Virus record (IMG/VR): IMGVR_UViG_3300005253_001115
Span: 124,001-188,000 of that record
Strand: one strand, 5' to 3'
DNA: 64,000 nt
The position numbers and the translations under genes were made by a program. Below the pieces are notes generated by a model. It was not told the origin of the DNA. It saw only the letters and a program-made list of their open reading frames with translations, and ran no database searches. Each line of letters begins with the position of its first letter. Position 1 is the first letter of the stretch. Below, piece after piece: positions 39,949 to 55,256 of this stretch.

Positions 39949-40192
39949 GGTTATCCTTTATTGTGGTGCAGGAGAAGTCGAACTCAACGCTCCTGTGTCT
40001 CTCCATGAGGTGCATCTCGGTCTGGTAGACCCGATTCCTGTTATCTCGGCTTTCAGAATCGACGAAGGTAGTGGCCTTTATGCGCTTCTTTCCGCGACTG
40101 GAAACTGTAGCCTCTACAGCAACCTTACGAACGTGCGCAAGGTTGCTGAGAAATTGAAAAACGTCCTGCTCAAGATCTCTCAGGGAACTCAT
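39914..40192 (-). CDS. Hypothetical protein
   Basis: 92 aa, ATGA-coupled to the upstream gene. Confidence 0.5.
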   Translation of the reverse strand: MSSLRDLEQDVFQFLSNLAHVRKVAVEATVSSRGKKRIKATTFVDSESRDNRNRVYQTEMHLMERHRSVEFDFSCTTIKDNHERTVETTTTP

Positions 40193-40653
40193 TTCTCTTC
40201 TCCTAGAGCTTCGATTAAGAAATCGTACACTTCTTGCTGCAATCCTGGGTTCTTAGACTCTCTGTTGCCTGCAACATTTAGTGTCTCAATCTTGTACATC
40301 TGGAGAAACTCTCCAAACAGATGAAAAGACTCCTCGCTAAATTCCTCAATCACCAAGCAAGGCTTGTTACTGTCCTTGCACATTCGTCTGGTGGTGTGCG
40401 AGCCGGGAGAGGAGACTCTCCCGAAAATGACAGTGGCATCAGAGTCTACCACATTGTACCGGGTTCGGGGAGCGTATTCGCCAGAAGCCAGCTCGCCTAC
40501 ATCGTACATTTTGGCGTATTCGGGATGATAGCCGTCTTCGGTCTTGAAGCCAAGGGGCATCTTGCCTCCTGTGGGAATACCCAGATATTTGGCTGCCTCT
40601 AAGCCACCTAGGTCCGCCCCGGACTGCGCTCCTGATATGATCTTCTTCAGCAT
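40189..40653 (-). CDS. SLOG-family protein (YpsA/'putative molybdenum carrier')
   Basis: KIISGAQSGADLGGLEAA...TGG..P.GFKTEDG...Y.PRT..NV.DSDATVIF...LNVAGNRES. Confidence 0.85.
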   Translation of the reverse strand: MLKKIISGAQSGADLGGLEAAKYLGIPTGGKMPLGFKTEDGYHPEYAKMYDVGELASGEYAPRTRYNVVDSDATVIFGRVSSPGSHTTRRMCKDSNKPCLVIEEFSEESFHLFGEFLQMYKIETLNVAGNRESKNPGLQQEVYDFLIEALGEEK

Positions 40654-41612
40654 TACTTCTCCTGAGATTTAGCCTGCCGCATGCGGCTGGCAGTACGCTT
40701 ATGTTCCGCTTCAATCTTGTCGATGGTAGCCGGTCGCCCATCAAAGAGATACTTGGTGGGGTTCATGGCCTTGTCACGATCGAAATTGCCTTTGTTGTGG
40801 AAACCCCATTTTCCAAAATGTTCAACATAAGATACAAGACTTGTAACCGCCTTACGTCCCGCGATTTCCCTGGAGTAGAAGCCGTCCCAGCCTCGCCCGT
40901 CCGGCACCTGAACCTTCTTGGGATTGTCCCGGAAACTCTTCATTCGGAAGAACATCGAGATGCCAGCCGCCATGCCACGTACCGAGGTGTATGGGTCGAT
41001 TACTTGGTTCTCGGTTCGTTTGCCACGAGGCGAGTGGAACTTGGCGTTGTAGAGGCAAATTGTACCCCAATTCGGGTACATTTCCATAATCTCGTGAAGA
41101 CGGTAGAAGAAATGTGGATCGTGTAGGCCGTCGCTATCGACGTGATAGAGGTACTCTGGTCCGTCAGGCCCAAAGTCCTCATCGAGCCAGGGCTTGAAGA
41201 TATCCGGCTTGAAATCACCCAGTACGCTCTTGGTAATGTTCGAGCGCAGGTTCTTAACGCCCCGCTTGCCACCCCTGGAGCGCTCGTGCCGGTACACCCG
41301 GTCGCAGAACTGCGCCAGCCACTCCTCGTCATATTCGTCGGAGCCGTCGTCATGGATGTACAGTTTCGCTTCCATCTTGTGGCGGTTCGTAGCCCCGATG
41401 CACATCTCTGCCGTGCCTCGGCGATTGTAGGTAAGAGGCGTGATGAGGGTCTTACGGGAGAGTGCCTTGACAGCTTCGTGATCGTAGTCAGCGAAGTGCG
41501 CAACAGCGTCAAACGGGACAATATATCCCGGCGCATTTGGATCAAACGGAATGGCTATAGACTTCACAGCTCGGGAAGGTGCCGGATTTTTTGGATCGGG
41601 TCTAATTGCCAT
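40653..41612 (-). CDS. GT-A fold (GT2-like) glycosyltransferase
   Basis: TYNRR, IHDDGSD, YLYHVDSDGLH (DxD motif), GWD, SYVEHFG. Confidence 0.75.
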   Translation of the reverse strand: MAIRPDPKNPAPSRAVKSIAIPFDPNAPGYIVPFDAVAHFADYDHEAVKALSRKTLITPLTYNRRGTAEMCIGATNRHKMEAKLYIHDDGSDEYDEEWLAQFCDRVYRHERSRGGKRGVKNLRSNITKSVLGDFKPDIFKPWLDEDFGPDGPEYLYHVDSDGLHDPHFFYRLHEIMEMYPNWGTICLYNAKFHSPRGKRTENQVIDPYTSVRGMAAGISMFFRMKSFRDNPKKVQVPDGRGWDGFYSREIAGRKAVTSLVSYVEHFGKWGFHNKGNFDRDKAMNPTKYLFDGRPATIDKIEAEHKRTASRMRQAKSQEK

Positions 41613-42402
41613 TTCGGTTGTTTTTCCTGTGAAGGGCTAGTGTCAAGGCGAAGACCTCATCTAAGTCGTCTCCCGCTGCGACTACTTTAGGGTAGCTGCG
41701 CATTTTGGCGGGAAAACGATTAGTGAAGGATGCTACGGTTGGCACCCCCAATGCTGCTGCGATGTGGAATCCTCCGCTGTCCGGTCCCACAAACAGACGG
41801 GAGCATTGAATCTCATTCGCCATCTTTAGCATGTGGGAGCGCCCAGGCTCCATGTGGTCCTGCCCCACCATCCTCACGAGAGGGTGCTGCCCGTGGGAAT
41901 CCATGAACTCCATGAAGCGCGAAATGACCCTGCGCCCGGATTCCCATGCCTTGTTGCGGGGCTCCTGTGGGATGTGGAAGGAGATATCGACAGTGGGTGG
42001 GGCCTTGATCTCAGGATGGGAGATCTCCGGGTAGCGGTCATCCTCGGTCCTTACAGGACACATTGTGCCGTCTAGGTAGAGCTTGGGTTGCCTGCGCTCC
42101 AGAGTGACACCGGCAGCCTCCGCAAAAGCGTCGATACCGTGTTGGCCGAAGGGTGCTCGCTCGATTACACCGTGTAGATTTACATGCACATCATACCCCT
42201 CGGGGGTAGGGTCCCAGCAGCCGGTACGAGTACAGAGAATCTCATCAATCAGGGGGTGATAGAGCATCAGGTCGTAAACGTGCCTGTGGGTCCGGTAGGT
42301 AATGTAACAGGGGGCATACTTATCGTGAAGAGCCCGGAGGATGGGCTCTGTCATAAGCATGTCTCCGGCACCACCGAGACGTGTAAGAAGAATTCTAGTC
42401 AC
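41602..42402 (-). CDS. GT9 (ADP-heptose heptosyltransferase-like) glycosyltransferase
   Basis: ILLTRLGGAGDMLMTEPILRAL...HPLIDEI...LFVGPDSGGFHIAAALGVPTV; GTG start at 42402. Confidence 0.85.
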   Translation of the reverse strand: MTRILLTRLGGAGDMLMTEPILRALHDKYAPCYITYRTHRHVYDLMLYHPLIDEILCTRTGCWDPTPEGYDVHVNLHGVIERAPFGQHGIDAFAEAAGVTLERRQPKLYLDGTMCPVRTEDDRYPEISHPEIKAPPTVDISFHIPQEPRNKAWESGRRVISRFMEFMDSHGQHPLVRMVGQDHMEPGRSHMLKMANEIQCSRLFVGPDSGGFHIAAALGVPTVASFTNRFPAKMRSYPKVVAAGDDLDEVFALTLALHRKNNRNGN

Positions 42403-43402
42403 GAAGAGTGCCCACCCAAGAACTTGCAGCCCCGTCAGCAGGAACATCTTCCCCGCTGATAAACTTCATCATCTTTTCCATTTGCTGGTCCCAGCCCCAG
42501 TTGGCGGACCATTCCCAACCCCGTCTTGCGATCTCTAGCCGTTCTTTGCTTTGATCCTTGTCCATCCAGTAACGTGCCTTCTCCAGAAGGTCCGGCACGT
42601 CACCGAAATTGAAGGTTACTAGCTGGTTGCCTTCCTCGAAGGAAGCAGCCACGTCCGTGTTCCTCTCGCTGAGAGCGAAGCCGCTGGAAGTTAGCAGGCG
42701 CACTAGGCGATTTGATGTGATGCCAACAGGGGTATCACCCTCACCCGGAGTACCACACACCATGTTCAGGCAAATGCCGCTGTTGTAGTACAACTTAGAA
42801 GCGTCCTCGTGGAAGATCCGCTTGTTGTGATGTACGCGAAAACCGTTACGCGCGAGAGCGGAAATTTTCGCCCGCCGACCACCGTCCCCTTTGTAGTTCG
42901 CGGACCCCAGAAACGCAATCTGGTCTGGGTTGGTGCGTGGAACATCAAGGTTCTGTGGACGCCAAAGACTGTGGCGACAACCCTGGTATATCTGGGCGAT
43001 TCGCCCCTTGAAGCCGTTGTTTCGGAACCAACGAGCGCCCTCTGATCCTGTCAAGAGGATACGGTCACACAGCAAACCGCGCTTCCCAATCTCATCTGGG
43101 CGACCCGGAGGACCACAGCCATTACCGCTAACGGAATCAAAGGTAAGGTACGTTGTGTCAGGCAGCGCGTTTACTAGGGCTGTGTAGACGCCCAGTGGGA
43201 TTACGGTGCCTTTACCGATTATGGTCGTATCGCAGCCCTCTGCCAGGGATGTTACGTAGTTGACGTAAGAATGGCTCTTGACAAGAGCGTTCTTGTTGGT
43301 CTCGATTTCTACCCATGTATGTCCCCCGGCCCGAAGACCGTCCAGCACACCGTAGATAGTGCTGCGCTTGTCGTTGAACGGGGCCATGATTGCAACCTTC
43401 AT
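42395..43402 (-). CDS. CgeB/DUF3880-like GT-B glycosyltransferase
   Basis: IAFLGS..Y...R...YYNSGICLN...TSNRLVRLLTSSGFALS...EIARRGWE; start MKVAIM, ATGA-coupled to hldD. Confidence 0.75.
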   Translation of the reverse strand: MKVAIMAPFNDKRSTIYGVLDGLRAGGHTWVEIETNKNALVKSHSYVNYVTSLAEGCDTTIIGKGTVIPLGVYTALVNALPDTTYLTFDSVSGNGCGPPGRPDEIGKRGLLCDRILLTGSEGARWFRNNGFKGRIAQIYQGCRHSLWRPQNLDVPRTNPDQIAFLGSANYKGDGGRRAKISALARNGFRVHHNKRIFHEDASKLYYNSGICLNMVCGTPGEGDTPVGITSNRLVRLLTSSGFALSERNTDVAASFEEGNQLVTFNFGDVPDLLEKARYWMDKDQSKERLEIARRGWEWSANWGWDQQMEKMMKFISGEDVPADGAASSWVGTLRD

Positions 43403-44352
43403 AGTCCCAACCTCCTTACATAAGCGTTGATACCTCTCTGTAGGTCGATGAAGGACTGCGTATAGCCCGCGCGCCGCAACTTCGTCATCTCGGCCTTGGT
43501 GTAATACTGGTACTGGTCTCGAATGTCTTCCGGCGTGTCCACCCATACGATCTTGGGAAAGACTTTGAGGGCTTCGAAGGCTTTGATAGCTAGATCTAAG
43601 AAGGGGCTGGATGCGCCTGTACCTAGGTTGTAGATGCCACGCTTCGAGTTGGCAATAGACCAGTGCAGCACCTTCACCACGTCATCGACGTAGATGAAGT
43701 CTCGGGACTGCATACCGTCATCGTACTCTTCGTTGTGTGACCGAAACAGTATCAGCTTCTTTGTTTCCTTGATCTGTTTTAACGCCTGGTACACCATGCT
43801 GGCCATGCGGCCCTTATGGGACTCGCCGTATCCGTAGACGTTGAAGAACTTGAAGCCTGCCCAGCTCGGAGGTACGATACCTCGACGCTCTAATTTCAGA
43901 ACATCTAGGTCGAAGGCGTGCTTGGACATGCCGTAGTGGTTTAGTGGCATCAGGTTCCGCAGGTCGTCTTCGTCGTCCGAGAACGTATCCGCTGCTCCGT
44001 AGGTGGCTGCGCTAGAAGCGTACACGAAGGGAACCAGATACTCGGAAGCGTACTCCCACAGGTCGTGAGAGAAGTCCGTGTTGAGTCTACGAAGCTCGTG
44101 TATGTCGGAAGCTGCGGTGTCCGTAATAGCCCCTAGGTGAATAATGGCATCAATGTGCCGTGGGGCATCATGAAGAAGATGCTGCATGATGTCGTCGGTA
44201 TCAAGCTTCAGACCAAAATCGAGCCCATCGTGGTCTGGTCGGGAGAAATTGGCGAGCTTATCGACAGAGATCAGCTCGATCTTTTCCTTGTTGCAGCTCT
44301 CCACGAACCGGGCTCCGATGAACCCGGCGGCTCCTGTGACTAGGTATCTCAT
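43399..44352 (-). CDS. hldD: ADP-L-glycero-D-manno-heptose 6-epimerase
   Basis: VTGAAGFIG, HLGAITDT, YASSAATYG, PLNHYGMSK, FKFFNVYG..E.HKGRMASMV, QSRDFIYVDD, GIYNLGTG, YQYYTKAEMTKLR.AGY are HldD/RfaD-specific motifs. Confidence 0.92.
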   Translation of the reverse strand: MRYLVTGAAGFIGARFVESCNKEKIELISVDKLANFSRPDHDGLDFGLKLDTDDIMQHLLHDAPRHIDAIIHLGAITDTAASDIHELRRLNTDFSHDLWEYASEYLVPFVYASSAATYGAADTFSDDEDDLRNLMPLNHYGMSKHAFDLDVLKLERRGIVPPSWAGFKFFNVYGYGESHKGRMASMVYQALKQIKETKKLILFRSHNEEYDDGMQSRDFIYVDDVVKVLHWSIANSKRGIYNLGTGASSPFLDLAIKAFEALKVFPKIVWVDTPEDIRDQYQYYTKAEMTKLRRAGYTQSFIDLQRGINAYVRRLGL

Positions 44353-44362
44353 GTCTGTACCT

Positions 44363-44929
44363 TTAGGGTATCTTGTAGAAGCACGCCTGAATATCGTCCA
44401 TGCCGTTCCAGTCCCTGGCCTGGAGAGGCTCTAACGAAAGGCGTGCAACAGTAGCTTCAAGCTGGTCCGGGAATACCTCGACACCGTAATCGTGGGCCGC
44501 GATGACAGACCCCATGGGGAGATGGTCGGCGTAGAAGTTGAACTCATCGACTTTGTTACCGCCGTCGCAGAAAAAGAAAGTGGGGCGATTGTCCATGAGG
44601 TTCGTGATAGCGCCCAGGCACTCCCAGTGATCTTGTGGGGAATTTCGCACGCCCAGGGCGTTGAATACAGGAAGAAGTGGCTCGTGTAGTTCGGGTCTGT
44701 TGTCGTAGGTAAGGAGTCTGTTCCCGCGCTGTACCGCGTGGAGGGCCAAAATCACCGACAGTGCTCCGGCTCCTGTCCCGATCTCCACAAAGCGTTGGAG
44801 CTGAGGGTTGGACGTAACGATGTCGTCAATGACCTTGTAAAGCCAGTACGTGTGCTGCTGACGCTGCCCTAGGAAGGTCTTGTACCATCGCTCTTGCACT
44901 ACCGGGTTGTCTCTGTTGTTGGGCCTCAC
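44363..44929 (-). CDS. Class I SAM-dependent methyltransferase (Methyltransf_24/CmcI-like)
   Basis: FVEIGTGAGALS, FFCDGG, GSVIAAHDY. Confidence 0.75.
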   Translation of the reverse strand: MRPNNRDNPVVQERWYKTFLGQRQQHTYWLYKVIDDIVTSNPQLQRFVEIGTGAGALSVILALHAVQRGNRLLTYDNRPELHEPLLPVFNALGVRNSPQDHWECLGAITNLMDNRPTFFFCDGGNKVDEFNFYADHLPMGSVIAAHDYGVEVFPDQLEATVARLSLEPLQARDWNGMDDIQACFYKIP

Positions 44930-45585
44930 AGCGGAACCGAAATCAAAGCTTCACCCTGCCCGGAAGGTAGGTGTATGTAGAACCAACCCGTGTCCGCAAC
45001 GAATGTCTTAACAGCCGCCGTTACCCCCACCTGTGCCCTATTCCACGGAGCTTCTTCCTTAAAGTCGTCTGCTAGAATGAAGCCGCCGGGACGCACAATG
45101 TCACGGGCAAGATACAGATCGCTGAGGCACCCTTCCTCGCTATGGTCGCCGTCAACGTGTACCAAATCAAAAAGCTCCATAGACTCCGCAAGGACCCGGG
45201 CCTCTGGGCTCAGAGAGTTTACCTCATAAGTAACAACAGTAGCCTCTGGGTACTTGTCTCGGAGAGTGTCTGTGGCGTGGTGCATGAAATTTCTCCTACC
45301 GCCCCAAGGAGCAAGACCCTTAACGCTCTGATTCATGTCCATACCCACATAGGTAGCTGTCGGGCATGCGTACAAAAAGGCCGCTGCCGCGTAGCCTGCC
45401 CGTATTCCTATCTCAAGAATGCGCTTTGGCTGCGTATGCTTGGCAATGGCAGCCTTATAGAGAGTGGATTCGTAAGCATCTGCCTTCCACGTCTTGCCGT
45501 CCGGCCCAGGGGGCTCAGACGGGTGAATGAACGGAGTATAGTCGAAAGTGCAACTTTCCGCACTAGCAATTATTTCTTCTCTCAC
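44926..45585 (-). CDS. Class I SAM-dependent methyltransferase (Methyltransf_24)
   Basis: ILEIGIRAGYAA, FDLVHVDGDHS, PGGFILADD, GVTAAV. Confidence 0.85.
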   Translation of the reverse strand: MREEIIASAESCTFDYTPFIHPSEPPGPDGKTWKADAYESTLYKAAIAKHTQPKRILEIGIRAGYAAAAFLYACPTATYVGMDMNQSVKGLAPWGGRRNFMHHATDTLRDKYPEATVVTYEVNSLSPEARVLAESMELFDLVHVDGDHSEEGCLSDLYLARDIVRPGGFILADDFKEEAPWNRAQVGVTAAVKTFVADTGWFYIHLPSGQGEALISVPL

Positions 45586-49433: not shown

Positions 49434-50326
49434 TACGTTCTCCTTTTTGCGGCGTGATAAGCCCTGAAATCCTCAATTTGCGGTAGACCGGCCTCTTCGA
49501 TTACCGGAGGATGCGGACCTTCGTACACATACAAGTTACCCCCACTATCGGGTGTAAAGCCCGGAGTCCAGCAGGGATTTCTGCGCTTGTAGTCTGCACC
49601 GAACAGCTCCATGCTCTTGTCGGTCCAGTAGGCTTCGTTATCTAGCTCAAAAGGCCGATAGATCTGATTCAACCAGTTCCATTTCCTCTGTTGTGCCTCG
49701 AATACGCGACCGGACTGCTGCTTGTATTCAGTCTTCCATTGTCTTTCCTTGTAGTCCTCTGGTGTCAGTAGACTGTAGTGGAACATACCTTTCTGCCCGG
49801 TGTCTCTAACAACATTGCGGTACTCAACCCGAGAATTCCAAGAGCAGGTCGGCAGGAACTTGCCGTTTCGGTCCTTGATTTTGTACAGGCGGTGGTGGGT
49901 GGAATGCAGGTACCTCTCCATATTGATAAAGAAGAACTTAGCGGGAAACTGGATAGTGTCTGCTGTCGGGTCATTCTCGATAATGTCTCTGGCTTCCTGT
50001 AGCGTTTCATCGAAATAAAACTCGTCCACATCCAACATGAACACCCAGTTTCCCGGCTCGTACAGAGTGCTGGCTGCCAGCATATTATTCAATGTCTTGC
50101 ACTTCCCTGTCGCTATGAACCCGTCGTTTATACAAGGCACCAAGGTAATCTTGTCGCCAAATTCTTGGGCCTTGAGCAGGGTAGTATCATGAAGCTCTGC
50201 CAGCAGCGGGGTATGTGCTCCGATGGAAACTATAACTTCGTCACAGAAGCTTAGAGCTTGCTTGATAGACGGACCAATGAAATCCTCAGCGTAATGCGCC
50301 CCGATCAGACCTATGATTTTGTTCAT
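49433..50326 (-). CDS. GT-A fold (GT2-like) glycosyltransferase
   Basis: FCDEVIVSIG, DTT, WVFMLDVDEFY (DxD motif), MFHYS. Confidence 0.75.
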   Translation of the reverse strand: MNKIIGLIGAHYAEDFIGPSIKQALSFCDEVIVSIGAHTPLLAELHDTTLLKAQEFGDKITLVPCINDGFIATGKCKTLNNMLAASTLYEPGNWVFMLDVDEFYFDETLQEARDIIENDPTADTIQFPAKFFFINMERYLHSTHHRLYKIKDRNGKFLPTCSWNSRVEYRNVVRDTGQKGMFHYSLLTPEDYKERQWKTEYKQQSGRVFEAQQRKWNWLNQIYRPFELDNEAYWTDKSMELFGADYKRRNPCWTPGFTPDSGGNLYVYEGPHPPVIEEAGLPQIEDFRAYHAAKRRT

Positions 50327-51075
50327 ATCATGAACCTCTTGAACGCCAACGGGTCTTCCGATCGGCAGGTTTTGACTACAGAACAGTATCTCTCCCATTC
50401 AGGGAATAGGCGAGATCGAAACGCTTTATCGTACCCCACCGATTTGGTGTAAACAAAACTGGGGACCTTGGAACTGGCTGCGACGTACACCATCAATCCC
50501 TGTACGCCGATGAATTTTTTGGCTCGGGATACAATTCCGATAGCTTCCAAAATTGAAGTCTTTCCTATCAAGTTCGTCACATTATGGCGGGAATAGCCAA
50601 GGAATTCTGGATTGTCACCCACGAGAACGAACTGCTGGTCTTTGTACTCCTCGATTAGGGAGGATATCTCATCCTCCCCCACCTGTCTGTGTCCCTCGTT
50701 TGATTTCCCGCCACGGGGAGAGCAGGCGATGTAGCTTCCTGTCACCTGTTTCGTTGCGGGGAACTTAAACGGTGGGTGTGGGTTCATTACGCTCATCCCA
50801 CCCTCTCTTTCTCTTGCTTTTTCTATGGACGGCCAGAGGCGAGGAAATTTCTGCGAAGGTAGACTGTTAAACTCTTCTTTGTTAACGAATTCCACCTGAA
50901 TTTTTGGCATAAGAGAATAGATCTGCCGGATATGCGGCTCCCAATGGTCTACAGCATTGCCAGCGTAATCGCTGCACTGCTTGATAAGGATCTTCTCGCG
51001 ACTCGCTAACCCGTGAACTACACAGTTAACGATGTACGAGTCCCCAAGTGTTCCTCTGCACTTAAACGTTTTCAT
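50323..51075 (-). CDS. Divergent GT9-like glycosyltransferase
   Basis: GTLGDSY, FVLVG, NLIGKTSILEAIGIVSRAKKFIG...YVAASSKVPSFV. Confidence 0.7.
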   Translation of the reverse strand: MKTFKCRGTLGDSYIVNCVVHGLASREKILIKQCSDYAGNAVDHWEPHIRQIYSLMPKIQVEFVNKEEFNSLPSQKFPRLWPSIEKAREREGGMSVMNPHPPFKFPATKQVTGSYIACSPRGGKSNEGHRQVGEDEISSLIEEYKDQQFVLVGDNPEFLGYSRHNVTNLIGKTSILEAIGIVSRAKKFIGVQGLMVYVAASSKVPSFVYTKSVGYDKAFRSRLFPEWERYCSVVKTCRSEDPLAFKRFMI

Positions 51076-51698
51076 TAGACTTTCCTTGATCGGAACAAGT
51101 AGTGAGAATTAGGCCGCTCGGCGCTGATGACTCCGAAATCCTCATCAATTACCGAACCCAGAGACTCGCTTATGACTTGGGGACCACGGATCTTCATGTG
51201 TTTACCCATCTTAGGGCTCTGATCTGCGTCATCAATGATGTAGATAAGGCCACCGGGCTTAACTACCCGGGCGATTTCGCTGGACCAGATAACGTAGTGC
51301 TCGGGGTCAACAATGTGCTGGAGAACGGTGAGGGCCATAGCGGAATCGAAGCTATTGTCCTCGAAGGGAATACGGTCCTCTGGCAGACCGACGAACTCCA
51401 CGTTCGGGAGATCGGGGGCATGCTCGAAAGCGCCTGAGTTGATATCGACGCCTACGTAGCTAGAAGCGAACTCCCTAGCCGCCGCAGCAAAGCGACCTAC
51501 ACCGCAGCCAAAGTCGATAATGCGCCCCGGGTCAGTACCCTCCATGGCCTGCCTGAGGGAGTCTCGGAAGACTTCCCACTGGTGGTCATTCACTGTCTTG
51601 CTGTTTCGCGTGGACACATATAGGGCACCCTCCTTCTTCAGGCGAGCAGGCCAGTATTCCCTGGCGATGTACGGGTTTTTTCGCAGGTCAGTGCTCAT
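51075..51698 (-). CDS. Class I SAM-dependent methyltransferase (Methyltransf_11)
   Basis: IIDFGCGVGRF, IPFEDNSFD, VLQHI, RVVKPGG. Confidence 0.9.
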   Translation of the reverse strand: MSTDLRKNPYIAREYWPARLKKEGALYVSTRNSKTVNDHQWEVFRDSLRQAMEGTDPGRIIDFGCGVGRFAAAAREFASSYVGVDINSGAFEHAPDLPNVEFVGLPEDRIPFEDNSFDSAMALTVLQHIVDPEHYVIWSSEIARVVKPGGLIYIIDDADQSPKMGKHMKIRGPQVISESLGSVIDEDFGVISAERPNSHYLFRSRKV

Positions 51699-52528
51699 GT
51701 CTTTGTCCAATGCTTAATGGGGGTTTCTGGGTTCATTCTGGCCACACAGCTATTGAAGGATAAGTCCACGTTAGGGGTTGGAACGTCGATGAACGTGACT
51801 GGGGTATTGAAGGGGTTCCAGTAGCTAAGGTAGCGTTCCATAGAAACTACGGGACGCCCGTACCAAGAGACGTGAGGTGTGCCGCAAGCACTAGCAAGAT
51901 GTAATGTCCCGCTGCTGGGTCCGATAGCAACTTTAGCCGCAGACAAGGCTCCACACAGGTCTCCCAGACCAACTCCTCTGAAGTCTACCGTACCTTCGAT
52001 GTACACGTTGTCAGTGCCTCCGTAACAGGCCACAGAATACCCGGCGTCTAGAAGACGTTTGACCAGACCTTCGCATTTGTCCCGTGGATACTCCTTTTCC
52101 GGGTAAGATCGTTTGCGGTACTTCTTCGGACCACGGAAGGCGCACATGATGTCTGCAACATGCTTGGGCCTCTCTGACCCCAGCTTCCTCCATTCTTTGG
52201 GGTGAATACCGTCCACCTTATCAGCCACCTTGATGGCCTTGAACTCTTTCTTGGCGTGGGCTTTCCAGAACCACATAGGGGTAATTGACCTCGTTCCCGC
52301 AGGAGGCTGGAAGGCAGGCTTGGACACTTTGCCAGAGTACATGTCGAAGTCCGGCAAGTGCGGATTTATGATGATCTCGTCCGCAAACTCGTACAAGTAT
52401 TCGCTGTCGGGCTGTGTCTCCACAATGACATGATCGTAGTCCTTAGCGATGTGCCGGATAGACGGGCTCCACGAGGCGATCTCCCACCCGAACTCTCCTA
52501 CCCAAGGCCCTGCGTACAGTTTCTTCAC
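51695..52528 (-). CDS. GT9-like glycosyltransferase
   Basis: GPWVGEFGWE N-terminus; K.YP...LV..L, DFRG..LGDL...AIGPSSGTLHLASACGTPHV. Confidence 0.7.
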   Translation of the reverse strand: MKKLYAGPWVGEFGWEIASWSPSIRHIAKDYDHVIVETQPDSEYLYEFADEIIINPHLPDFDMYSGKVSKPAFQPPAGTRSITPMWFWKAHAKKEFKAIKVADKVDGIHPKEWRKLGSERPKHVADIMCAFRGPKKYRKRSYPEKEYPRDKCEGLVKRLLDAGYSVACYGGTDNVYIEGTVDFRGVGLGDLCGALSAAKVAIGPSSGTLHLASACGTPHVSWYGRPVVSMERYLSYWNPFNTPVTFIDVPTPNVDLSFNSCVARMNPETPIKHWTKT

Positions 52529-53418
52529 GTCTTGTCTCCGAGCATGTAGTCCAGCCTGTGCGCAGCCGTGTCCCTACTTCGATACAGCTCTGTACCCCAG
52601 TTGCGAATTCTTGCCACCTCCCCAGGATTCTCTAAGTAGTAGCTGGCCAGTTCTCGGGCCTCCTGTGGAGTCTTAAACCACACCAGATGTTTCTTGTTCT
52701 CGAACAGCTTCTCGATTCCGGGGAACCAGTTCACCAACGCGAAACCGTTGGAACTAAGGATATTGTACAGGCGGTTCGAGGTGTACCCTTTGGCGGGTAG
52801 TGATATGGACAAGGACACGGGAGACATAGCATACAGGTACTTCTGGTCCTTGGTTAGACCCTCTCTGTTGATGATCTTGACAGGGTGTTCTTTCCTGATC
52901 TCTTCGATAATAGGGGAGCGGTTTCCGTGAAACTCCCTGGCACTAATCAACGCCTTCAATTTGTCCGTGTCTGTCGGGTTTGAAGCCTCGAACGCGCTAC
53001 CTGGTCGTACTATCCCAAGGAACAGGATGTCCTCATCGAACTTCCTTCCGTTTTTGACATCGGCATCGTTTCCGCACTGCGGGAGGTAGTAGGCTGGCTT
53101 ACCAAAATGCTCAGCGTAGGCATCCGTGAACAACTGGTTGCATACAAACATTTCGGAAGCAGTTGTGCCGGATGTGATGATCTTCGGGTCCCGCAAATCG
53201 CACATCCACCACAGTATTTTGGCAGAAGTCTGGAAAGTCGGTGGGGTATTCATGAAGTACACGATGACATCGTAGTCGTCCCAACTCTTACCGCCAGGGG
53301 CAATGCCTTCCTTGCCCTTGGGCATCTCCAGCACATCAAAGCCTTTTGCCTTGGCGGCGATGGCTAGGGATGCTTGGATGGGACCGATAGGGAGTCTGTA
53401 CGCCACTGCTACTTTCAC
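52525..53418 (-). CDS. CgeB/DUF3880-like GT-B glycosyltransferase
   Basis: WWMCD.R, YLPQC, DILFLG, YTSNRLYNILSSNGFAL..FPGIE.LF...HLVWF...YYLENP. Confidence 0.8.
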   Translation of the reverse strand: MKVAVAYRLPIGPIQASLAIAAKAKGFDVLEMPKGKEGIAPGGKSWDDYDVIVYFMNTPPTFQTSAKILWWMCDLRDPKIITSGTTASEMFVCNQLFTDAYAEHFGKPAYYLPQCGNDADVKNGRKFDEDILFLGIVRPGSAFEASNPTDTDKLKALISAREFHGNRSPIIEEIRKEHPVKIINREGLTKDQKYLYAMSPVSLSISLPAKGYTSNRLYNILSSNGFALVNWFPGIEKLFENKKHLVWFKTPQEARELASYYLENPGEVARIRNWGTELYRSRDTAAHRLDYMLGDKT

Positions 53419-53855
53419 GGCTTGACCAGCTCACATGTGAAGAATCTCTTGTCCGTCTCCAGCTTTCGCAGGGTCCATCCCTGGAAACCGTAGTGGCGGC
53501 CGTAATTCTTCCATTGCTGTGTGGCCAGGTCCATGTAGAGAAACGACCGAGGGAAGAAGAACCGCTTGTGGGTAGGGTCTCCGAAAGCAGCATCGGGCCA
53601 ATTCTCGGCATCCGGTACCTTCCACCAAAACACCCCGCCCTTCTGTACTACCCGGAACACCTCATTCATGGCGAACATGAACTCATCGTTGTCGAAGTGT
53701 TCCATGAGGTTATCGGCCTCGACTAGCTCCACGGAGTTGTCCTCGTAGGGTAGCCGGTCCTTGCCGATGTTGCAGATGACATCCGCAGGAGCCTGCATGT
53801 CAATGTTGACATAGCCCTTCTTGTGCAGCTTACCGCACCCGATATTTAGCTTCAT
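53415..53855 (-). CDS. Small SAM-methyltransferase domain protein
   Basis: KLNIGCG...GYVNID, LPYEDNSV, LMEHF, EVFRV...GG, VPD, DPTH. Confidence 0.85.
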   Translation of the reverse strand: MKLNIGCGKLHKKGYVNIDMQAPADVICNIGKDRLPYEDNSVELVEADNLMEHFDNDEFMFAMNEVFRVVQKGGVFWWKVPDAENWPDAAFGDPTHKRFFFPRSFLYMDLATQQWKNYGRHYGFQGWTLRKLETDKRFFTCELVKP

Positions 53856-54685
53856 TTGTTGCCCCCAGTTCCGGGAGGAGCCATGGCCGCTTTTAGGGCG
53901 TTAAATTTCGCGTCTGCTCTTTTTTGTGCTGCTGAACGCTGTATCGCTTTGGCCACTTGTTTCGCTCTGTCCGCATTTGCCGCCCTGTTCGCTTGTGCCG
54001 CGCTACCCGTTTGTGTTTTTTTAGCTATGGCCGCTTGTGCCACAGCCATCCTTTCAGGAGTGTGCCATTTACTGATGAACAGCTCCTTGGCCTTTTTCTT
54101 GAGGGCCAATATATCCTTGCCGCGTGCTTCAGCTATTGGGGTGCTAGACATTCCGTGATGGAATATGAATACGTCTGTACGGATTGCGGTGGTATAGCCG
54201 TGTTCCTGTACCTCCATACAAAAATCACTGTCTTCGCCGTAAAGTTCAAACTCTTCGTCAAAGCCTCCTATCTCTTCCCACACAGACTTTGGAAAAACGA
54301 TACAAAAACCAACTAGCGGGTACTTGACAACCATAAGCCGCTTGTGCTTTGTTTGGAACTTCCTGCAATTTCCTTGCGGCCCTGTAGACTTGTTGGTCAT
54401 GGGGCCAACGGCCCCCAGTTTGTCATCTTCTTCGAAGCACTCAAGCAGGCGGCTTAGCCACGCTGCCTCTACTCGGGTGTCGTTGTTCAGAAGGCAAATA
54501 TACTCGGCATCCGAGGCCCGAATAAGGTCGTTCCAGACCTTAGACAGCCCCTCATCGGCTTCGTAGTTGTCGTGCGCCGTCAGGACATACTCCACGTCCT
54601 GAGTGTGCTCTTCCACACTAGAGACGCACTCGGCCTCTAGTTCCGGTAAGCCGTATTTGACGATGATGATCTCACACTTCGCCAT
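53852..54685 (-). CDS. GT2 glycosyltransferase with Ala/Lys-rich C-terminal tail
   Basis: EYICLLNNDT, WLSRL, AVGP, VGFC, IGGFDEEF..YGEDSDFC, IFHHG. Confidence 0.9.
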   Translation of the reverse strand: MAKCEIIIVKYGLPELEAECVSSVEEHTQDVEYVLTAHDNYEADEGLSKVWNDLIRASDAEYICLLNNDTRVEAAWLSRLLECFEEDDKLGAVGPMTNKSTGPQGNCRKFQTKHKRLMVVKYPLVGFCIVFPKSVWEEIGGFDEEFELYGEDSDFCMEVQEHGYTTAIRTDVFIFHHGMSSTPIAEARGKDILALKKKAKELFISKWHTPERMAVAQAAIAKKTQTGSAAQANRAANADRAKQVAKAIQRSAAQKRADAKFNALKAAMAPPGTGGNK

Positions 54686-55256
54686 CACGAACCTCGTTCT
54701 TTACGCATCGGGTTCCGTACCGCTTGTTGGGGCCGGACACCTCAATTGATTGCCAAGTGTCGAAATATTCGTCCACGGCCTTATTGGTACCTGGACATCT
54801 GGGGGCATTGTAGTCATCGAAGACCATGATCCCGCCTTCCACCAGACGCGGCCAGAATAGTTCAATGGCAGCCTTCGTGGATTCGTAGATGTCCACATCG
54901 ACATGCACTAGACAGAATCTAAGGTCCGTGAGTCCCTCGGCGCTCTCCGGGAACCAGCCAGGCCAGAACTCCACGTTGTCCCTGTCCTTTAGTAAAGCCT
55001 GTACGGCCTCCAGGGAGGTGTCAGCGAAGTCCCCCGGCTCGTGTATGTCGAACTCGGGGTTGGTCGGCGGCATCCCTTCGAAGGTGTCAAAGAGGTGAAT
55101 GAGCTTCATAGGCAAGTAATCGGCAAGTATCTGGGCAGTTCCGCCTTTATACACACCAATCTCTGCCACACTACCAGTAAGGTCGCGCACCTGTAAACAC
55201 TGCTTGGCTAGGAATTCTTGCCGTACCTCGGGTACGACGCTATTCGTCTTCCTCAT
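54672..55256 (-). CDS. TylF/MycF-family (macrocin-type) sugar O-methyltransferase
   Basis: GSVAEIGVYKGG, LFDTFEGMP, GWFPES, VHVDVDIYEST, GGIMVFDDY, G..KAVDEY. Confidence 0.9.
   Translation of the reverse strand: MRKTNSVVPEVRQEFLAKQCLQVRDLTGSVAEIGVYKGGTAQILADYLPMKLIHLFDTFEGMPPTNPEFDIHEPGDFADTSLEAVQALLKDRDNVEFWPGWFPESAEGLTDLRFCLVHVDVDIYESTKAAIELFWPRLVEGGIMVFDDYNAPRCPGTNKAVDEYFDTWQSIEVSGPNKRYGTRCVKNEVRDGEV

What the first reader, a model, noticed from the sequence alone, without database searches (positions are those of the whole stretch)
40653..55256. Phage-encoded, all-soluble heptose/methyl/sulfate glycan assembly line (candidate virion glycosylation system)
Seen: 20 consecutive co-oriented, mostly overlapping genes: HldD, 4 GT9-like, 3 GT2-like, 2 CgeB-like glycosyltransferases, 8 methyltransferase-like proteins (including TylF) and 2 sulfotransferases. 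The run is joined seamlessly to phage PhoH on one side and SLOG/DnaB genes on the other. I see no multi-TM protein in it (no Wzx/Wzy/ABC exporter, no GtrAB/GtrC-type periplasmic modifier, no undecaprenyl-priming enzyme). Established: HldD makes ADP-L,D-heptose; GT9 enzymes transfer heptose to LPS core, and the related Aah/TibC family heptosylates proteins; TylF methylates sugar hydroxyls; LPS-like gene islands occur in some large cyanophages, and glycosylated virions are known in some actinophages. Inference: the acceptor is cytoplasmic, most plausibly the phage's own S/T-rich structural proteins, giving a heptose-containing, O-methylated and sulfated glycan coat. Alternatives are nascent host LPS core (receptor masking) or phage DNA. 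I do not know of a characterised phage pathway with this combination.
Basis: partly seen in the sequence, partly recalled or inferred. Interest (0 to 1): 0.9.

Follow-up and report, generated by a model that had tools for sequence, protein, structure and literature searches.

The report
Variable sugar-coat gene island in jumbo phage
An uncultured giant phage carries twenty back-to-back genes for soluble enzymes that build a heptose-containing, methylated and sulfated sugar chain. Related phages carry a reshuffled version at the same spot, but what the sugar is attached to (phage particle or host surface) is still unknown.

Summary
Window 40653-55265 (- strand) is 20 consecutive, translationally coupled genes between an intein-bearing PhoH and cpYpsA(SLOG)/DnaB.

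- **Firm assignments:** HldD, two GT9, two CgeB-like GT-B, one GT2, one GT-A (by fold), five methyltransferases, two sulfotransferases.
- **Weak or unsupported:** g10/g14 as GT9-like, g13 as GT2, g5/g7 as methyltransferases; g12 has no methyltransferase support.
- **No transmembrane protein** was found in the island.

The window is part of a 266-kb IMG/VR jumbo-phage contig. Six relatives (DnaB identity 47-72% where measured) hold an 8-14 kb island at the same locus. Four glycosyltransferases (g16, g3, g2, g1) occur in all six, and an MT11 methyltransferase in five. The rest varies and is mosaic: HldD, sulfo-, pyruvyl-, FkbM and TylF enzymes, PhyH, radical SAM. The core families have no close cellular or catalogued phage homologues. 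Composition matches the rest of the phage, so a host island or chimera is excluded.

This is a new, unusually large and tailoring-rich variant of the polymorphic glycan clusters known from jumbo cyanophages. The acceptor is unresolved:

- phage protein or virion, about 0.4;
- host LPS or other lipid-linked glycan, about 0.35.

No S/T-rich acceptor is seen in the window. The absence of membrane proteins does not exclude LPS.

The parts
55240..56991 (-). PhoH-like ATPase, upstream flank. It carries a ~347-aa intein in its P-loop.
   Evidence: phrog_170 at 1.6e-66. Residues 1-53 and 401-583 are contiguous in relatives' 216-232-aa PhoH. The junctions read GTGK|A... and ...THN|T.
54672..55256 (-). 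g20: TylF / Methyltransf_24 sugar O-methyltransferase-like
   Evidence: PF05711 71 bits. Present in 2 of 6 relatives at 66-69%. Start refined.
53852..54685 (-). g19: GT2 (GT-A) glycosyltransferase with an Ala/Lys-rich C-terminal tail
   Evidence: PF13632, PF13712, PF13641 and PF00535 all above cut-offs. Present in 3 of 6 relatives at 64-74%, without the tail.
53415..53855 (-). g18: small class-I methyltransferase (Methyltransf_11)
   Evidence: PF08241 24.7 bits, cut-off 21.2. 84% identical to the L018 copy but 34% to the closest relative L003, which shows a mosaic origin.
52525..53418 (-). g17: CgeB-like GT-B glycosyltransferase (Glyco_trans_1_2)
   Evidence: PF13524 51 bits. Paralogue of g3.
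51695..52528 (-). g16: core GT9-like GT-B glycosyltransferase. It has Ser in place of the GT9 heptose-binding Asp.
   Evidence: PF01075 24.3 bits. hhalign 94.7% to the g2 family C-terminal domain. Present in 6 of 6 relatives at 45-63%. Motifs. The family has 1,192 representative clusters, some fused to GT, MT or ST domains.
51075..51698 (-). g15: Methyltransf_11 methyltransferase. The core methyltransferase family, paralogue of g8.
   Evidence: PF08241 62 bits. 57% identical to g8. A homologue is present in 5 of 6 relatives.
50323..51075 (-). g14: possible GT9-like C-terminal domain protein, paralogue of g10
   Evidence: No Pfam hit. 39% identical to g10. hhalign 70% to the g2 family.
49433..50326 (-). 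g13: putative GT-A (GT2-like) glycosyltransferase
   Evidence: PF13704 17.6 bits and PF00535 15.3 bits, both sub-threshold. It has a DVDEF motif. Only metagenomic homologues at 35-88%. Absent from the six relatives.
   Evidence: No Pfam, NCBIfam or PHROG hit. hhalign 0.2% to the MT24/TylF profile.
48175..48783 (-). g11: PAPS-type sulfotransferase
   Evidence: PF00685 28.7 bits. N-terminal HPRSGTHYL and WRGFEDVAKS motifs.
47381..48178 (-). g10: possible GT9-like C-terminal domain protein
   Evidence: No Pfam hit. hhalign 70%, E 4e-5, to the g2 family.
46806..47384 (-). g9: PAPS-type sulfotransferase
   Evidence: PF00685 41 bits. 31.5% identical to g11. ATGA-type start at 47384.
46190..46819 (-). 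g8: Methyltransf_11 methyltransferase
   Evidence: PF08241 60.5 bits.
45582..46193 (-). g7: weak methyltransferase-like protein
   Evidence: PF08241 17.4 bits, below cut-off. Weak NCBIfam MftM and BchM hits. Absent from relatives.
44926..45585 (-). g6: Methyltransf_24 O-methyltransferase-like
   Evidence: PF13578 47.9 bits.
44363..44929 (-). g5: weak Methyltransf_24-like protein
   Evidence: PF13578 19.9 bits, below cut-off, with a VEIGTGAG motif. 76% identical to the L017 copy.
43399..44352 (-). g4: HldD, ADP-L-glycero-D-manno-heptose 6-epimerase
   Evidence: TIGR02197 307.4 bits, cut-off 274.6. Present in 3 of 6 relatives, plus a 38-aa remnant in L011. Phage copies are monophyletic at 99/95 support. 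The nearest cellular copy is at most 52% identical.
42395..43402 (-). g3: core CgeB-like GT-B glycosyltransferase
   Evidence: PF13524 39.5 bits. Present in 6 of 6 relatives at 42-66%.
41602..42402 (-). g2: core compact (265 aa) GT9 glycosyltransferase
   Evidence: PF01075 31 bits. The profile hits 3TOV, WaaF and WaaC. Model pLDDT 90; Foldseek hits 3TOV, TibC, WaaC and WaaF at E 7e-10 to 4e-7. GGxGDM and GPDSGGFH motifs. Present in 6 of 6 relatives at 62-81%.
40653..41612 (-). g1: core lineage-specific GT-A glycosyltransferase
   Evidence: Invariant HDDGSD and DSD motifs. Model pLDDT 88.5 with a GT-A fold; best matches are POMGnT1, GnT-I, ColGalT1, TarS and SpsA. Present in 6 of 6 relatives at 65-77%. 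No relative was found in the scan of 185,579 species genomes.
40189..40653 (-). cpYpsA (SLOG) protein, downstream flank
   Evidence: PF12694 122.9 bits. Conserved next to the island in relatives.
37952..39322 (-). DnaB-like replicative helicase, the conserved downstream anchor
   Evidence: phrog_19 at 6.9e-56. Used to find the relatives.

Best explanation
The run is a resident glycan-assembly island of an uncultured jumbo-phage lineage. It is inherited vertically at a fixed locus but shuffled module by module.

**Expression.** It is expressed as part of one long, translationally coupled operon together with patatin, PhoH, cpYpsA and DnaB.

**Core (inferred).** Four lineage-specific, TM-less glycosyltransferases found in every relative build a conserved core oligosaccharide on the cytoplasmic side. 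They are g16 (GT9-like), g3 (CgeB-like GT-B), g2 (compact GT9) and g1 (GT-A). One Methyltransf_11 enzyme joins them. Heptose comes from the host ADP-heptose pool, with the last epimerisation topped up by phage HldD.

**Variable periphery (inferred).** The variable genes extend and cap this core, so each phage displays a different methylated, anionic glycan.
- In this phage: g10/g14, g13, g17, g19; the TylF, MT24 and MT11 O-methyltransferases; two PAPS sulfotransferases.
- In relatives also: pyruvyl transferase, PhyH dioxygenase, radical SAM, FkbM methyltransferases and GT4.

**What is shown.** Gene content, families, synteny, the conserved-core/variable-periphery pattern, phage residency and the absence of export or priming genes.

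**What is inferred.** The order of steps, the donors and the acceptor.

**Preferred acceptor (about 0.4).** A phage-encoded protein, most likely on the virion surface, by analogy with chlorovirus capsid glycans, which have a conserved core plus strain-specific decoration. The glycan-assembly part alone I hold at about 0.85.
For: **Families and folds.**

**Operon structure.** 14 of 20 junctions have 1- or 4-nt overlaps, and there is no excess of promoters or terminators.

**The window is phage.** It contains baseplate, spike, tail fibre and replication genes and lies on a 266,640-bp IMG/VR contig.

**Same locus in six relatives.** Islands are 8-14 kb. In the presence matrix, g1, g2, g3 and g16 occur in 6 of 6 relatives. 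g1 and g2 are at 62-81% identity, as conserved as PhoH (64-83%) and more conserved than DnaB (47-72%). The other genes are patchy and mosaic: g18 is 84% identical to a distant relative but 34% to the closest one. One relative keeps an HldD remnant.

**The core families are phage-lineage specific.**
- g1: 35 clusters, all metagenomic; none found in the scan of 185,579 species genomes; one 32% hit among 50,697 phage records.
- g2: identity drops from 59% straight to 26%, with no hit in phage records.
- No PHROG matches for g1, g2, g3 or g16.

**No lipid-carrier machinery.** No priming enzyme, flippase, polymerase, ligase or ABC exporter appears in any of the seven islands. The only TM protein is an MgtC moron in one relative.

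**Fusions.** g16-type domains occur fused to GT, methyltransferase and sulfotransferase domains elsewhere, which links these activities in one pathway.

**Analogy.** The chlorovirus conserved glycan core is described in PMC7826918, and clade-specific giant-virus fibril glycosylation clusters in PMC10117803.
Against: - Nothing in the sequence identifies the acceptor.
- No S/T-rich tract exists in the tail and baseplate proteins of the window. The capsid, sheath and tube were not seen.
- GT9 enzymes are overwhelmingly LPS-core enzymes, and the g2 model fits WaaC best by TM-score: 0.66 against 0.53-0.57 for TibC.
- The island sits in, and is apparently co-transcribed with, the replication module rather than the late structural module.
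- Pyruvyl transferases, sulfotransferases and terminal O-methylation are typical of bacterial surface polysaccharides.
- The literature's default reading of polymorphic jumbo-phage GT clusters is host-surface modification (PMC7824862).
- g16 lacks the GT9 Asp and g10/g14 lack the whole motif, so the number of heptoses is uncertain.
- HldD is absent from half of the relatives.
Confidence: 0.4

Rival explanations
1. Host-envelope remodelling. The soluble enzymes act on the cytoplasmic face of the inner membrane on nascent lipid A-core, or on an undecaprenyl-linked O-antigen or capsule intermediate. The altered, methyl- or sulfate-capped glycan is exported by host MsbA/Lpt or Wzm/Wzt. It then masks receptors against superinfecting or competing phages, or stops progeny from re-adsorbing to debris.
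For: - GT9 membership of g2 and g16, with best TM-scores to WaaC and WaaF.
- HldD makes the LPS-core donor.
- All LPS-core glycosyltransferases are TM-less (established knowledge), so the lack of TM proteins fits.
- Pyruvyl, sulfate and methyl tailoring is typical of surface polysaccharides.
- The island is polymorphic between co-occurring relatives: three island types in one Loki's Castle sediment assembly.
- Co-transcription with early or middle replication genes.
- The published interpretation of cyanophage clusters (PMC7824862).
Against: - A heptose-bearing host already has its own WaaC, WaaF and HldD.
- The core GT families are ancient, phage-specific and as conserved as essential phage genes. 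They are not repeatedly re-acquired from hosts.
- No island contains any export, ligase or priming gene.
- g2 is about 60-80 residues shorter than LPS heptosyltransferases, with deletions in the linker and C-terminal parts. It scores far below the NCBIfam WaaC, WaaF and WaaQ cut-offs.
Confidence: 0.35
2. A non-anchored or small-molecule product. This could be a cytoplasmic polymethylated oligosaccharide, in the manner of the mycobacterial methylglucose and methylmannose polysaccharides made by soluble GT/MT pairs. It could also be a glycosylated secondary metabolite, or a glycan on a non-structural phage or host protein, used for host takeover or released at lysis.
For: - All enzymes are soluble, methyltransferases are very abundant, and a TylF-family enzyme is present.
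- There are weak NCBIfam similarities to the mycofactocin oligosaccharide methyltransferase and glycosyltransferase.
- Iyer et al. propose secondary-metabolite clusters in cyanophages.
Against: - No aglycone or scaffold biosynthesis genes are present.
- Ten glycosyltransferases are many for a metabolite.
- Strong between-phage diversification suggests an exposed, recognised structure.
Confidence: 0.12
3. DNA hypermodification. The glycosyltransferases decorate a modified base (for example 5-hydroxymethylpyrimidine) of phage DNA with heptose-containing glycans to evade restriction.
For: - Phage gene clusters that put heptose and di-heptose on 5hmC are documented (bioRxiv 10.1101/2023.12.21.572611).
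- The island lies among replication and nucleotide-metabolism genes.
Against: - No cytosine C5-methyltransferase, TET/JBP-type dioxygenase or dNMP hydroxymethylase was detected in the island.
- Known DNA glycans are mono- to trisaccharides. Here there are about ten GTs plus seven or eight MTs and two STs.
- T4 beta-GT is not among the top 50 fold matches of g2.
Confidence: 0.05
4. Artefact: a host LPS island captured recently, or joined to phage DNA by misassembly.
For: None found.
Against: - The same locus is occupied in independent assemblies from JGI, Logan, ENA and NCBI.
- Junctions with both flanks are overlapping genes.
- Tetranucleotide r is 0.833, within the 0.78-0.89 range of other chunks. 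GC3 is 0.607 against 0.609.
- The nearest cellular HldD is at most 52% identical.
Confidence: 0.01

Closest known systems
Jumbo-cyanophage 'LPS / capsular polysaccharide' clusters (P-SSM2 type), as surveyed by Iyer et al. 2021 (PMC7824862)
   Same: A phage-resident cluster of several paralogous glycosyltransferases from different families plus an NAD-dependent epimerase. It is polymorphic even between related phages, and its function has never been tested experimentally. HldD-like genes also occur in these cyanophages at 31-35% identity.
   Different: - This phage is not a cyanophage by any marker seen. Its DnaB is about 30% identical to Vibrio, Erwinia, Pseudomonas and Burkholderia jumbo phages.
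- It has 20 genes, against the 15-gene cluster quoted as the large case.
- It has no sugar kinase or nucleotidyltransferase, so it depends on host nucleotide sugars.
- It is dominated by tailoring enzymes: 5-7 methyltransferases and 2 sulfotransferases.
- It sits at a fixed locus with a conserved four-GT core, which has not been described for the cyanophage clusters.
- No DNA similarity to any of 50,697 phage records.
Chlorovirus PBCV-1 capsid N-glycan machinery (A064R, A111/114R; PMC7826918, PMC9614988) and Megavirinae fibril glycosylation clusters (PMC10117803)
   Same: Virus-encoded soluble GT and methyltransferase modules working in the cytoplasm, independently of host secretory glycosylation. 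The glycan core is conserved across the lineage and the decoration is strain- or clade-specific. O-methylated sugars are present. g16-type domains occur in multidomain GT/MT/ST fusions like A064R.
   Different: - The hosts are eukaryotic.
- Homology is only at the generic GT-A / GT-B level: g1 against giant-virus GTs gives TM 0.4-0.5.
- The acceptor there is proven to be the major capsid protein or fibrils. Here it is unknown.
Mycobacteriophage virion O-glycosylation (Che8, Corndog; Freeman et al. 2023, cited in PMC12619734; paper not held)
   Same: Tailed-phage-encoded glycosyltransferases that modify the phage's own capsid and tail-tube subunits in the cytoplasm.
   Different: - Those systems have 2-4 genes in actinophages of about 50-70 kb (from memory).
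- They involve no GT9, heptose or sulfotransferase.
- Their acceptor tails are at the C-termini of capsid and tube proteins. The window holds no capsid or tail-tube gene, and its structural proteins carry no S/T-rich tract.
LPS inner-core heptosyltransferases WaaC / WaaF / WaaQ (GT9)
   Same: g2 has the GT-B GT9 fold, an N-terminal G-D catalytic motif and a C-terminal D-S-G-x-x-H donor motif. It is a TM-less peripheral enzyme, and it lies two genes downstream of HldD (g4).
   Different: - g2 is 265 aa, against 320-350 aa for these enzymes.
- NCBIfam scores are 19-41 bits against cut-offs of 135-185.
- Identity to structures is 10-14%.
- g16 has Ser for the heptose-binding Asp.
Bacterial autotransporter heptosyltransferases (TibC / Aah)
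   Same: The fold match to TibC (E 2e-8, 16-17% identity) is as good as to WaaC by E-value. These enzymes carry out cytoplasmic protein heptosylation with ADP-heptose.
   Different: - There is no sequence-level hit of the g2 profile to TibC at E<=1.
- g2 is about 140 residues shorter, so it lacks TibC's extra domain.
- There is no autotransporter neighbour.
Phage DNA glycan hypermodification clusters (Pyle et al., bioRxiv 10.1101/2023.12.21.572611)
   Same: Phage GTs related to LPS enzymes, with heptose among the sugars transferred.
   Different: Those clusters centre on a cytosine methyltransferase plus a 5mYOX/TET enzyme with 1-3 GTs. None of these base-modifying enzymes is in the island.

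Membership tests
HldD (ADP-L-glycero-D-manno-heptose 6-epimerase) | Scores above the curated equivalog cut-off of TIGR02197 | tested here: met
   307.4 bits against a cut-off of 274.6, full length 4-315 of 317.
HldD (ADP-L-glycero-D-manno-heptose 6-epimerase) | SDR Rossmann GxxGxxG motif and catalytic Tyr-x-x-x-Lys | tested here: met
   G7, G10, G13, Y140 and K144 are invariant in the four phage copies.
HldD (ADP-L-glycero-D-manno-heptose 6-epimerase) | Epimerase activity on ADP-D,D-heptose | not testable with these tools
   Needs an enzyme assay.
CAZy GT9 / Pfam Glyco_transf_9 | PF01075 score above the gathering threshold | tested here: met
   g2 31.0 bits and g16 24.3 bits, cut-off 22. g10 and g14 have no hit.
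CAZy GT9 / Pfam Glyco_transf_9 | Two-domain GT-B fold superposable on solved GT9 structures | tested here: met
   g2 model pLDDT 90. The top 31 Foldseek hits, with one exception (rank 13, an NDH-PSI subunit), are GT9 enzymes (3TOV, TibC, WaaC, WaaF), E 7e-10 to 5e-7, TMq up to 0.66. Not tested for g16, g10 or g14.
CAZy GT9 / Pfam Glyco_transf_9 | N-terminal G-D and C-terminal D-(S/T)-G-x-x-H motifs | tested here: inconclusive
   Present in the g2 family. g16 has S-S-G-x-L-H, so the Asp is missing. g10 and g14 lack the motif.
LPS heptosyltransferase I/II/III equivalogs (WaaC, WaaF, WaaQ) | Score above the NCBIfam equivalog cut-offs | tested here: not met
   g2 best is 40.7 bits against 170.2. 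g16 scores about 15 bits against 135-185.
LPS heptosyltransferase I/II/III equivalogs (WaaC, WaaF, WaaQ) | Transfers heptose to Kdo2-lipid A or the core | not testable with these tools
   Needs in vitro or in vivo assays.
Autotransporter heptosyltransferases (TibC/Aah) | Family-level sequence similarity | tested here: not met
   The g2-family profile hits 3TOV, WaaF and WaaC but not TibC at E<=1.
Autotransporter heptosyltransferases (TibC/Aah) | About 400-aa architecture with an extra iron-binding / oligomerisation module, and an adjacent autotransporter acceptor gene | tested here: not met
   g2 is 265 aa. Its neighbours are g1 and g3, and no autotransporter is in the window.
Jumbo-phage polysaccharide-modification clusters (Iyer et al. 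2021) | Phage-resident cluster with several paralogous GTs of different families plus an NAD-dependent epimerase | tested here: met
Jumbo-phage polysaccharide-modification clusters (Iyer et al. 2021) | Polymorphism between related phages | tested here: met
   Presence/absence matrix and mosaic identities.
Jumbo-phage polysaccharide-modification clusters (Iyer et al. 2021) | Own sugar-activation enzymes (PfkB kinase, nucleotidyltransferase) in 'complete' clusters | tested here: not met
   None among the 20 proteins. The rest of the 266-kb genome was not examined.
Jumbo-phage polysaccharide-modification clusters (Iyer et al. 2021) | Product is a host surface polysaccharide | not testable with these tools
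   This is untested for the cyanophage clusters as well.
Phage virion glycosylation systems (mycobacteriophage type) | Structural proteins with S/T-rich or C-terminal acceptor extensions | tested here: not met
   No window ORF exceeds 12 S/T in 30 residues and none has such a C-terminal tail. Capsid, sheath and tube are outside the window, so the test is incomplete.
Phage virion glycosylation systems (mycobacteriophage type) | Glycan detected on virion proteins | not testable with these tools
   Needs glycoproteomics.
Phage DNA glycan hypermodification clusters | Adjacent base-activating enzymes (C5-MTase plus TET/5mYOX, or dNMP hydroxymethylase) | tested here: not met
   No such Pfam or NCBIfam hit in the island, nor in the neighbouring window genes that were scanned; several small window ORFs were not scanned.
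PAPS-dependent sulfotransferases (Sulfotransfer_1) | PF00685 above threshold, and 5'-PSB / 3'-PB-like motifs | tested here: met
   g9 41.4 bits and g11 28.7 bits, cut-off 22. The PRSG(N/T)H and R-x-x-E-D-x-x-x-S motifs were read from the sequence. Matching these to the PSB and PB loops rests on my own knowledge.

The most novel reading that the evidence does not exclude
The island is an autonomous virion-glycosylation system of tailed phages that probably infect Gram-negative hosts. A conserved four-enzyme core attaches a heptose-containing oligosaccharide to capsid or tail proteins in the cytoplasm. Swappable methyl-, sulfo- and pyruvyl-transferase modules give each phage its own anionic, methyl-capped coat. 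This would be a bacterial-virus counterpart of chlorovirus and mimivirus capsid glycosylation, and the first sulfated phage glycan.
Probability: 0.35. Interest if true: 0.85.

Novelty: new variant of a known kind. Interest (0 to 1): 0.6.

Why it matters
Large glycan clusters in phages have been known from cyanophages for two decades, but nobody has shown what they modify. This lineage offers a cleaner handle for three reasons:

- The locus is fixed.
- Four core enzymes are universal, phage-specific and compact.
- The tailoring set varies naturally between relatives.

Because all the enzymes are soluble and use common donors (ADP-heptose, SAM, PAPS), the core can be reconstituted in E. coli K-12 against candidate acceptors.

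**If the acceptor is the virion**, self-glycosylation would extend from actinophages and giant eukaryotic viruses to jumbo phages. It would also introduce heptosylated and sulfated phage coats, relevant to particle stability, adsorption and recognition.

**If the acceptor is LPS**, this would be direct evidence for receptor masking by lytic jumbo phages in sediments.

Either way, the g1, g2 and g16 families are new, small glycosyltransferase scaffolds. The island is also an example of O-antigen-like diversifying evolution inside virus genomes.

Tried and rejected
**Searches that found nothing**
- Megablast of the island against 50,697 phage records gave no match.
- tblastn of g2 against phage records gave none. 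g1 gave one 32% hit in a 636-kb uncultured phage, with no cluster around it.
- PDB sequence searches with single g2 and g16 sequences, and with the g1, g10/g14 and g16 profiles, gave nothing useful. Only the g2-family profile worked.
- The genome-contig scan with the g1 profile gave no relative.
- None of nine island proteins tested has a PHROG match, except TylF-like g20.
- ARAGORN found no tRNA in the window.

**Acceptor leads that did not hold up**
- S/T-rich acceptor tracts: none found.
- Collagen-like acceptor idea, prompted by the g1 fold match to ColGalT1 and PhyH in relatives. The tail-fibre protein has only ten G-X-Y triplets without Lys, and the window island has no PhyH, so I dropped it.
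- A three-TM ORF inside the island of relative L003 looked like a possible GtrA-type flippase. It is an MgtC-family moron.
- The 772-aa 3xLaminin_G_3 protein next to g1 in L003 has no counterpart in the window.

**Family calls that failed**
- g12 as a methyltransferase is not supported.
- g7 against the MT24 profile is not supported.

**Lineage and literature**
- Whether the lineage is the published 'moraphages' could not be decided from the paper text.
- Freeman et al. 2023 is not held in the library.

**Tool availability**

Full report
**1. What is there**

The whole 64-kb window is coded on the '-' strand and has uniform composition.

- Positions 1-29 kb hold a contractile-tail and baseplate module. 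It includes a baseplate wedge, a gp5-like spike, an M23-peptidase giant protein and tail-fibre-like proteins.
- Positions 31-40 kb and 55-64 kb hold replication and nucleotide genes. These are a clamp-like protein, an exonuclease, a UvrD-like helicase, DnaB, PhoH, patatin, an SF2 helicase, a DHH phosphoesterase and a DNA ligase.
- The window equals positions 124001-188000 of IMGVR_UViG_3300005253_001115, a 266,640-bp viral contig.
- Its DnaB is only about 30% identical to DnaB of isolated jumbo phages of Vibrio, Erwinia, Pseudomonas and Burkholderia. So this is an uncultured, deeply branching jumbo phage.

**2. The observation**

Twenty ORFs fill 40653-55265 without a break. After refining starts against homologues and stop/start geometry, 14 of 20 junctions are ATGA/GTGA-type 4-nt or 1-nt overlaps. 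The island also overlaps both flanking genes, PhoH and cpYpsA. Promoter-like and terminator-like sites are fewer than in shuffled sequence. It is therefore a translationally coupled part of a longer operon.

Pfam and NCBIfam support these assignments:

| Class | Firm | Weak or unsupported |
|---|---|---|
| HldD | g4 (TIGR02197 above its equivalog cut-off) | none |
| GT9 | g2, g16 | g10/g14 (paralogues, 39% identical to each other) |
| CgeB-like Glyco_trans_1_2 | g3, g17 | none |
| GT2 / GT-A | g19; g1 by fold | g13 |
| Methyltransferases | g6, g8, g15, g18, g20 (TylF) | g5, g7 weak; g12 unsupported |
| Sulfotransfer_1 | g9, g11 | none |

Details on the weaker calls:
- g10/g14 resemble only the C-terminal donor domain of the g2 family, at hhalign 70%.
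- g13, g5 and g7 are sub-threshold.
- g12 has no support as a methyltransferase.
- g1 is below the Pfam threshold, but its family has invariant DDGS and DSD motifs. A confident AlphaFold model (pLDDT 88.5) is a GT-A fold closest to GT13, GT25 and GT2 enzymes.
- g2 gives a pLDDT-90 model. Its best PDB matches are GT9 enzymes (3TOV, TibC, WaaC, WaaF), with one unrelated hit among the top 31.

A Kyte-Doolittle scan finds no TM segment in any of the 20 proteins.

The corrections are 5 firm, 2 weak and 1 unsupported methyltransferases, and 2 firm plus 2 weak GT9-like proteins.

**3. It is a phage feature, not a host island or a chimera**

- *Composition.* The island matches the rest of the window. 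Tetranucleotide r is 0.833 against 0.78-0.89 for other 14.6-kb chunks. GC3 is 0.607 against 0.609.
- *Independent assemblies.* Assemblies from IMG/VR, JGI, Logan, ENA and NCBI show the same locus occupied in relatives. The gene order is helicase, patatin, PhoH, island, cpYpsA, a 210-aa protein, DnaB. Two of the relatives (L018, L019) show no recognisable patatin or PhoH at this position.
- *HldD.* The nearest cellular HldD among 185,579 species genomes is 52% identical. The nearest groups are Bdellovibrionota, Myxococcota and Planctomycetota, then Bacteroidota. The four phage HldDs form one clade with 99/95 support. One relative keeps a 38-residue HldD remnant. This points to one old acquisition followed by losses.
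- *g1 family.* It has 35 clusters in a 5.8-billion-protein collection, all metagenomic. No relative was found in the genome-contig scan.
- *g2 family.* Identity drops from 59% straight to 26% for bacterial GT9.
- *PHROGs.* None of g1, g2, g3, g16, g10, g12, g13, g9 or g7 matches any PHROG family.

**4. Anatomy across the lineage**

Island sizes are 8.1, 7.5, 10.3, 11.9, 13.9 and 13.9 kb in six relatives, against 14.6 kb here. The presence/absence matrix shows a core and a variable part.

Core:
- g1 (65-77%), g2 (62-81%), g3 (42-66%) and g16 (45-63%) are in all six relatives.
- The g8/g15 methyltransferase is in five of six.
- g1 and g2 are as conserved as PhoH (64-83%) and more conserved than DnaB (47-72%).

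Variable part:
- HldD is in 3 of 6 relatives plus a remnant, g19 in 3, g20 in 2, sulfotransferases in 2, and g5 in 1.
- g6, g7, g12 and g13 are in none.
- Relatives add polysaccharide pyruvyl transferase, PhyH dioxygenase, a Rieske protein, radical SAM, FkbM methyltransferases, GT4 and further epimerases.

Identities are mosaic. g18 is 84% identical to a distant relative but 34% to the closest one, so modules are exchanged between islands.

Three different island types come from one deep-sea sediment assembly, SDBU01 (Loki's Castle KR126).

No island holds a priming phosphoglycosyltransferase, flippase, polymerase, ligase or ABC exporter. The only membrane protein is an MgtC-family moron in one relative.

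**5. How it most likely works**

Shown: a set of soluble GT-A and GT-B glycosyltransferases, SAM methyltransferases and PAPS sulfotransferases, plus the last enzyme of ADP-L,D-heptose synthesis, all co-expressed.

Inferred from family knowledge:
- g2 uses ADP-heptose. It keeps the N-terminal G-D and C-terminal D-S-G-x-x-H motifs.
- g16 may use another donor, because it has Ser in place of the Asp.
- The four universal GTs lay down a conserved core oligosaccharide. The variable GTs extend it, and the methyl, sulfate and pyruvate groups cap it.
- Donors come from the host: ADP-D,D-heptose, SAM and PAPS. No other supply gene is in the island.

g16-type domains fused elsewhere to GT2, GT8, GT64, GT92, CgeB-like, FkbM, MT11 and Sulfotransfer_2 domains support a functional link between these activities.

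**6. The acceptor**

This is the open point.

For a phage-encoded acceptor (virion):
- The core enzymes are ancient, phage-specific and under constraint equal to essential genes.
- Nothing links the island to lipid carriers.
- The conserved-core/variable-periphery pattern is what chloroviruses show for capsid glycans (PMC7826918).
- Giant-virus fibril clusters are likewise clade-specific (PMC10117803).

For host LPS or lipid-linked glycans:
- GT9 and HldD are LPS-core hallmarks.
- By TM-score, g2 fits WaaC best.
- Pyruvyl, sulfate and methyl tailoring is typical of surface polysaccharides.
- The island is embedded in the replication operon.
- The published reading of polymorphic jumbo-phage clusters is superinfection exclusion (PMC7824862).

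Capsid, sheath and tube lie outside the window.

DNA glycosylation has a precedent that includes heptose. It is unlikely here: base-activating enzymes are absent and the enzyme set is far too large.

My estimates are: phage protein or virion 0.4, host envelope 0.35, other soluble or non-structural product 0.12, DNA 0.05, artefact 0.01 or less.

**7. Comparison with known systems, and novelty**

- The closest known kind is the jumbo-cyanophage 'LPS / capsule' cluster. P-SSM2, with 15 genes, is described as the large case and as mainly a cyanophage trait.
- This island is outside the cyanophages and larger.
- It lacks sugar-activation genes and is dominated by tailoring enzymes, including sulfotransferases. 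I found no paper linking sulfotransferases to jumbo phages.
- It has a fixed locus with a universal four-GT core.
- It works like chlorovirus or mimivirus autonomous glycosylation but is not homologous beyond fold level.
- It is not a member of the WaaC/F/Q equivalogs or of the TibC/Aah family.

I rate it a new variant of a known kind, with interest 0.6. It is descriptively solid and experimentally tractable, but its key biological claim is unproven.

**8. Limits**

- TM prediction was a simple hydropathy scan.
- Only 64 kb of the 266-kb genome and roughly 20-kb slices of the relatives were examined.
- The host is unknown. HldD affinities are only a weak hint.
- The genome-contig scans rely on short peptide patterns.
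- Statements about WaaC residues, PAPS-binding loops, mycobacteriophage systems and mycobacterial methylated polysaccharides rest on my own knowledge.

Noticed in passing
window 55240-56991 (-): PhoH is 583 aa because a ~347-aa intein with a LAGLIDADG-like motif is inserted in the P-loop (GTGK|A ... THN|T). PhoH of all relatives is 216-232 aa and lacks it.
   Followed up: partly
window 32770-35715 (-): The UvrD-like helicase is 981 aa, against 629-637 aa in relatives. It carries a second intein, again in the P-loop (C-HPRG ... THN|SGKT). It hits the same intein-containing PHROGs as the PhoH insert.
   Followed up: partly
window 56909-57814 (-): A patatin-like phospholipase (PF01734, 101.6 bits) lies directly upstream of PhoH. 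It is conserved at that place in most relatives. Its role is unknown.
   Followed up: no
L003:13569-14054 (+) (IMGVR_UViG_3300037755_000305): An MgtC-family membrane protein (130.6 bits) is inserted between the g3 and g2 homologues of the closest relative. It looks like a moron, not a glycan flippase.
   Followed up: yes
L003:15774-18092 (+): A 772-aa protein with three Laminin_G_3 (ConA-like lectin) domains is inserted directly after the g1 homologue in the closest relative. It has no counterpart in the window. It could be a carbohydrate-binding or decoration protein linked to the island.
   Followed up: partly
L011:5464-5601 (+): A 45-codon ORF is the remnant of the HldD N-terminus (71% identity over 38 residues). 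It documents loss of HldD in that phage.
   Followed up: yes
window 2655-6293 (-), residues 1108-1137: The 1212-aa tail-fibre-like protein holds a short collagen-like run of ten G-X-Y triplets near its C-terminus.
   Followed up: partly
window 19987-20565 (-): An HNH / endonuclease VII-like homing endonuclease gene sits inside the baseplate module.
   Followed up: no
window 53852-54685 (-), C-terminal ~80 residues of g19: The GT2 enzyme g19 ends in an Ala/Lys/Gln-rich low-complexity tail. Homologues in relatives lack it and align to only 74-75% of its length. It may be an amphipathic or binding extension.
   Followed up: no
proteins P0123-P0262: The g16-type GT9-like domain forms a family of about 1,200 representative clusters. 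In some unannotated metagenomic proteins it is fused to GT2, GT8, GT64, GT92, TOD1/MUCI70 plus CgeB-like, FkbM, MT11 or Sulfotransfer_2 domains. Several partners are eukaryote or giant-virus-type families.
   Followed up: partly
L011, L014/L018, L016/L017 (GenBank SDBU01 contigs): Three related phages with three different island versions come from a single Loki's Castle deep-sea sediment assembly (KR126, PMC6401483). So island diversity exists within one community.
   Followed up: partly
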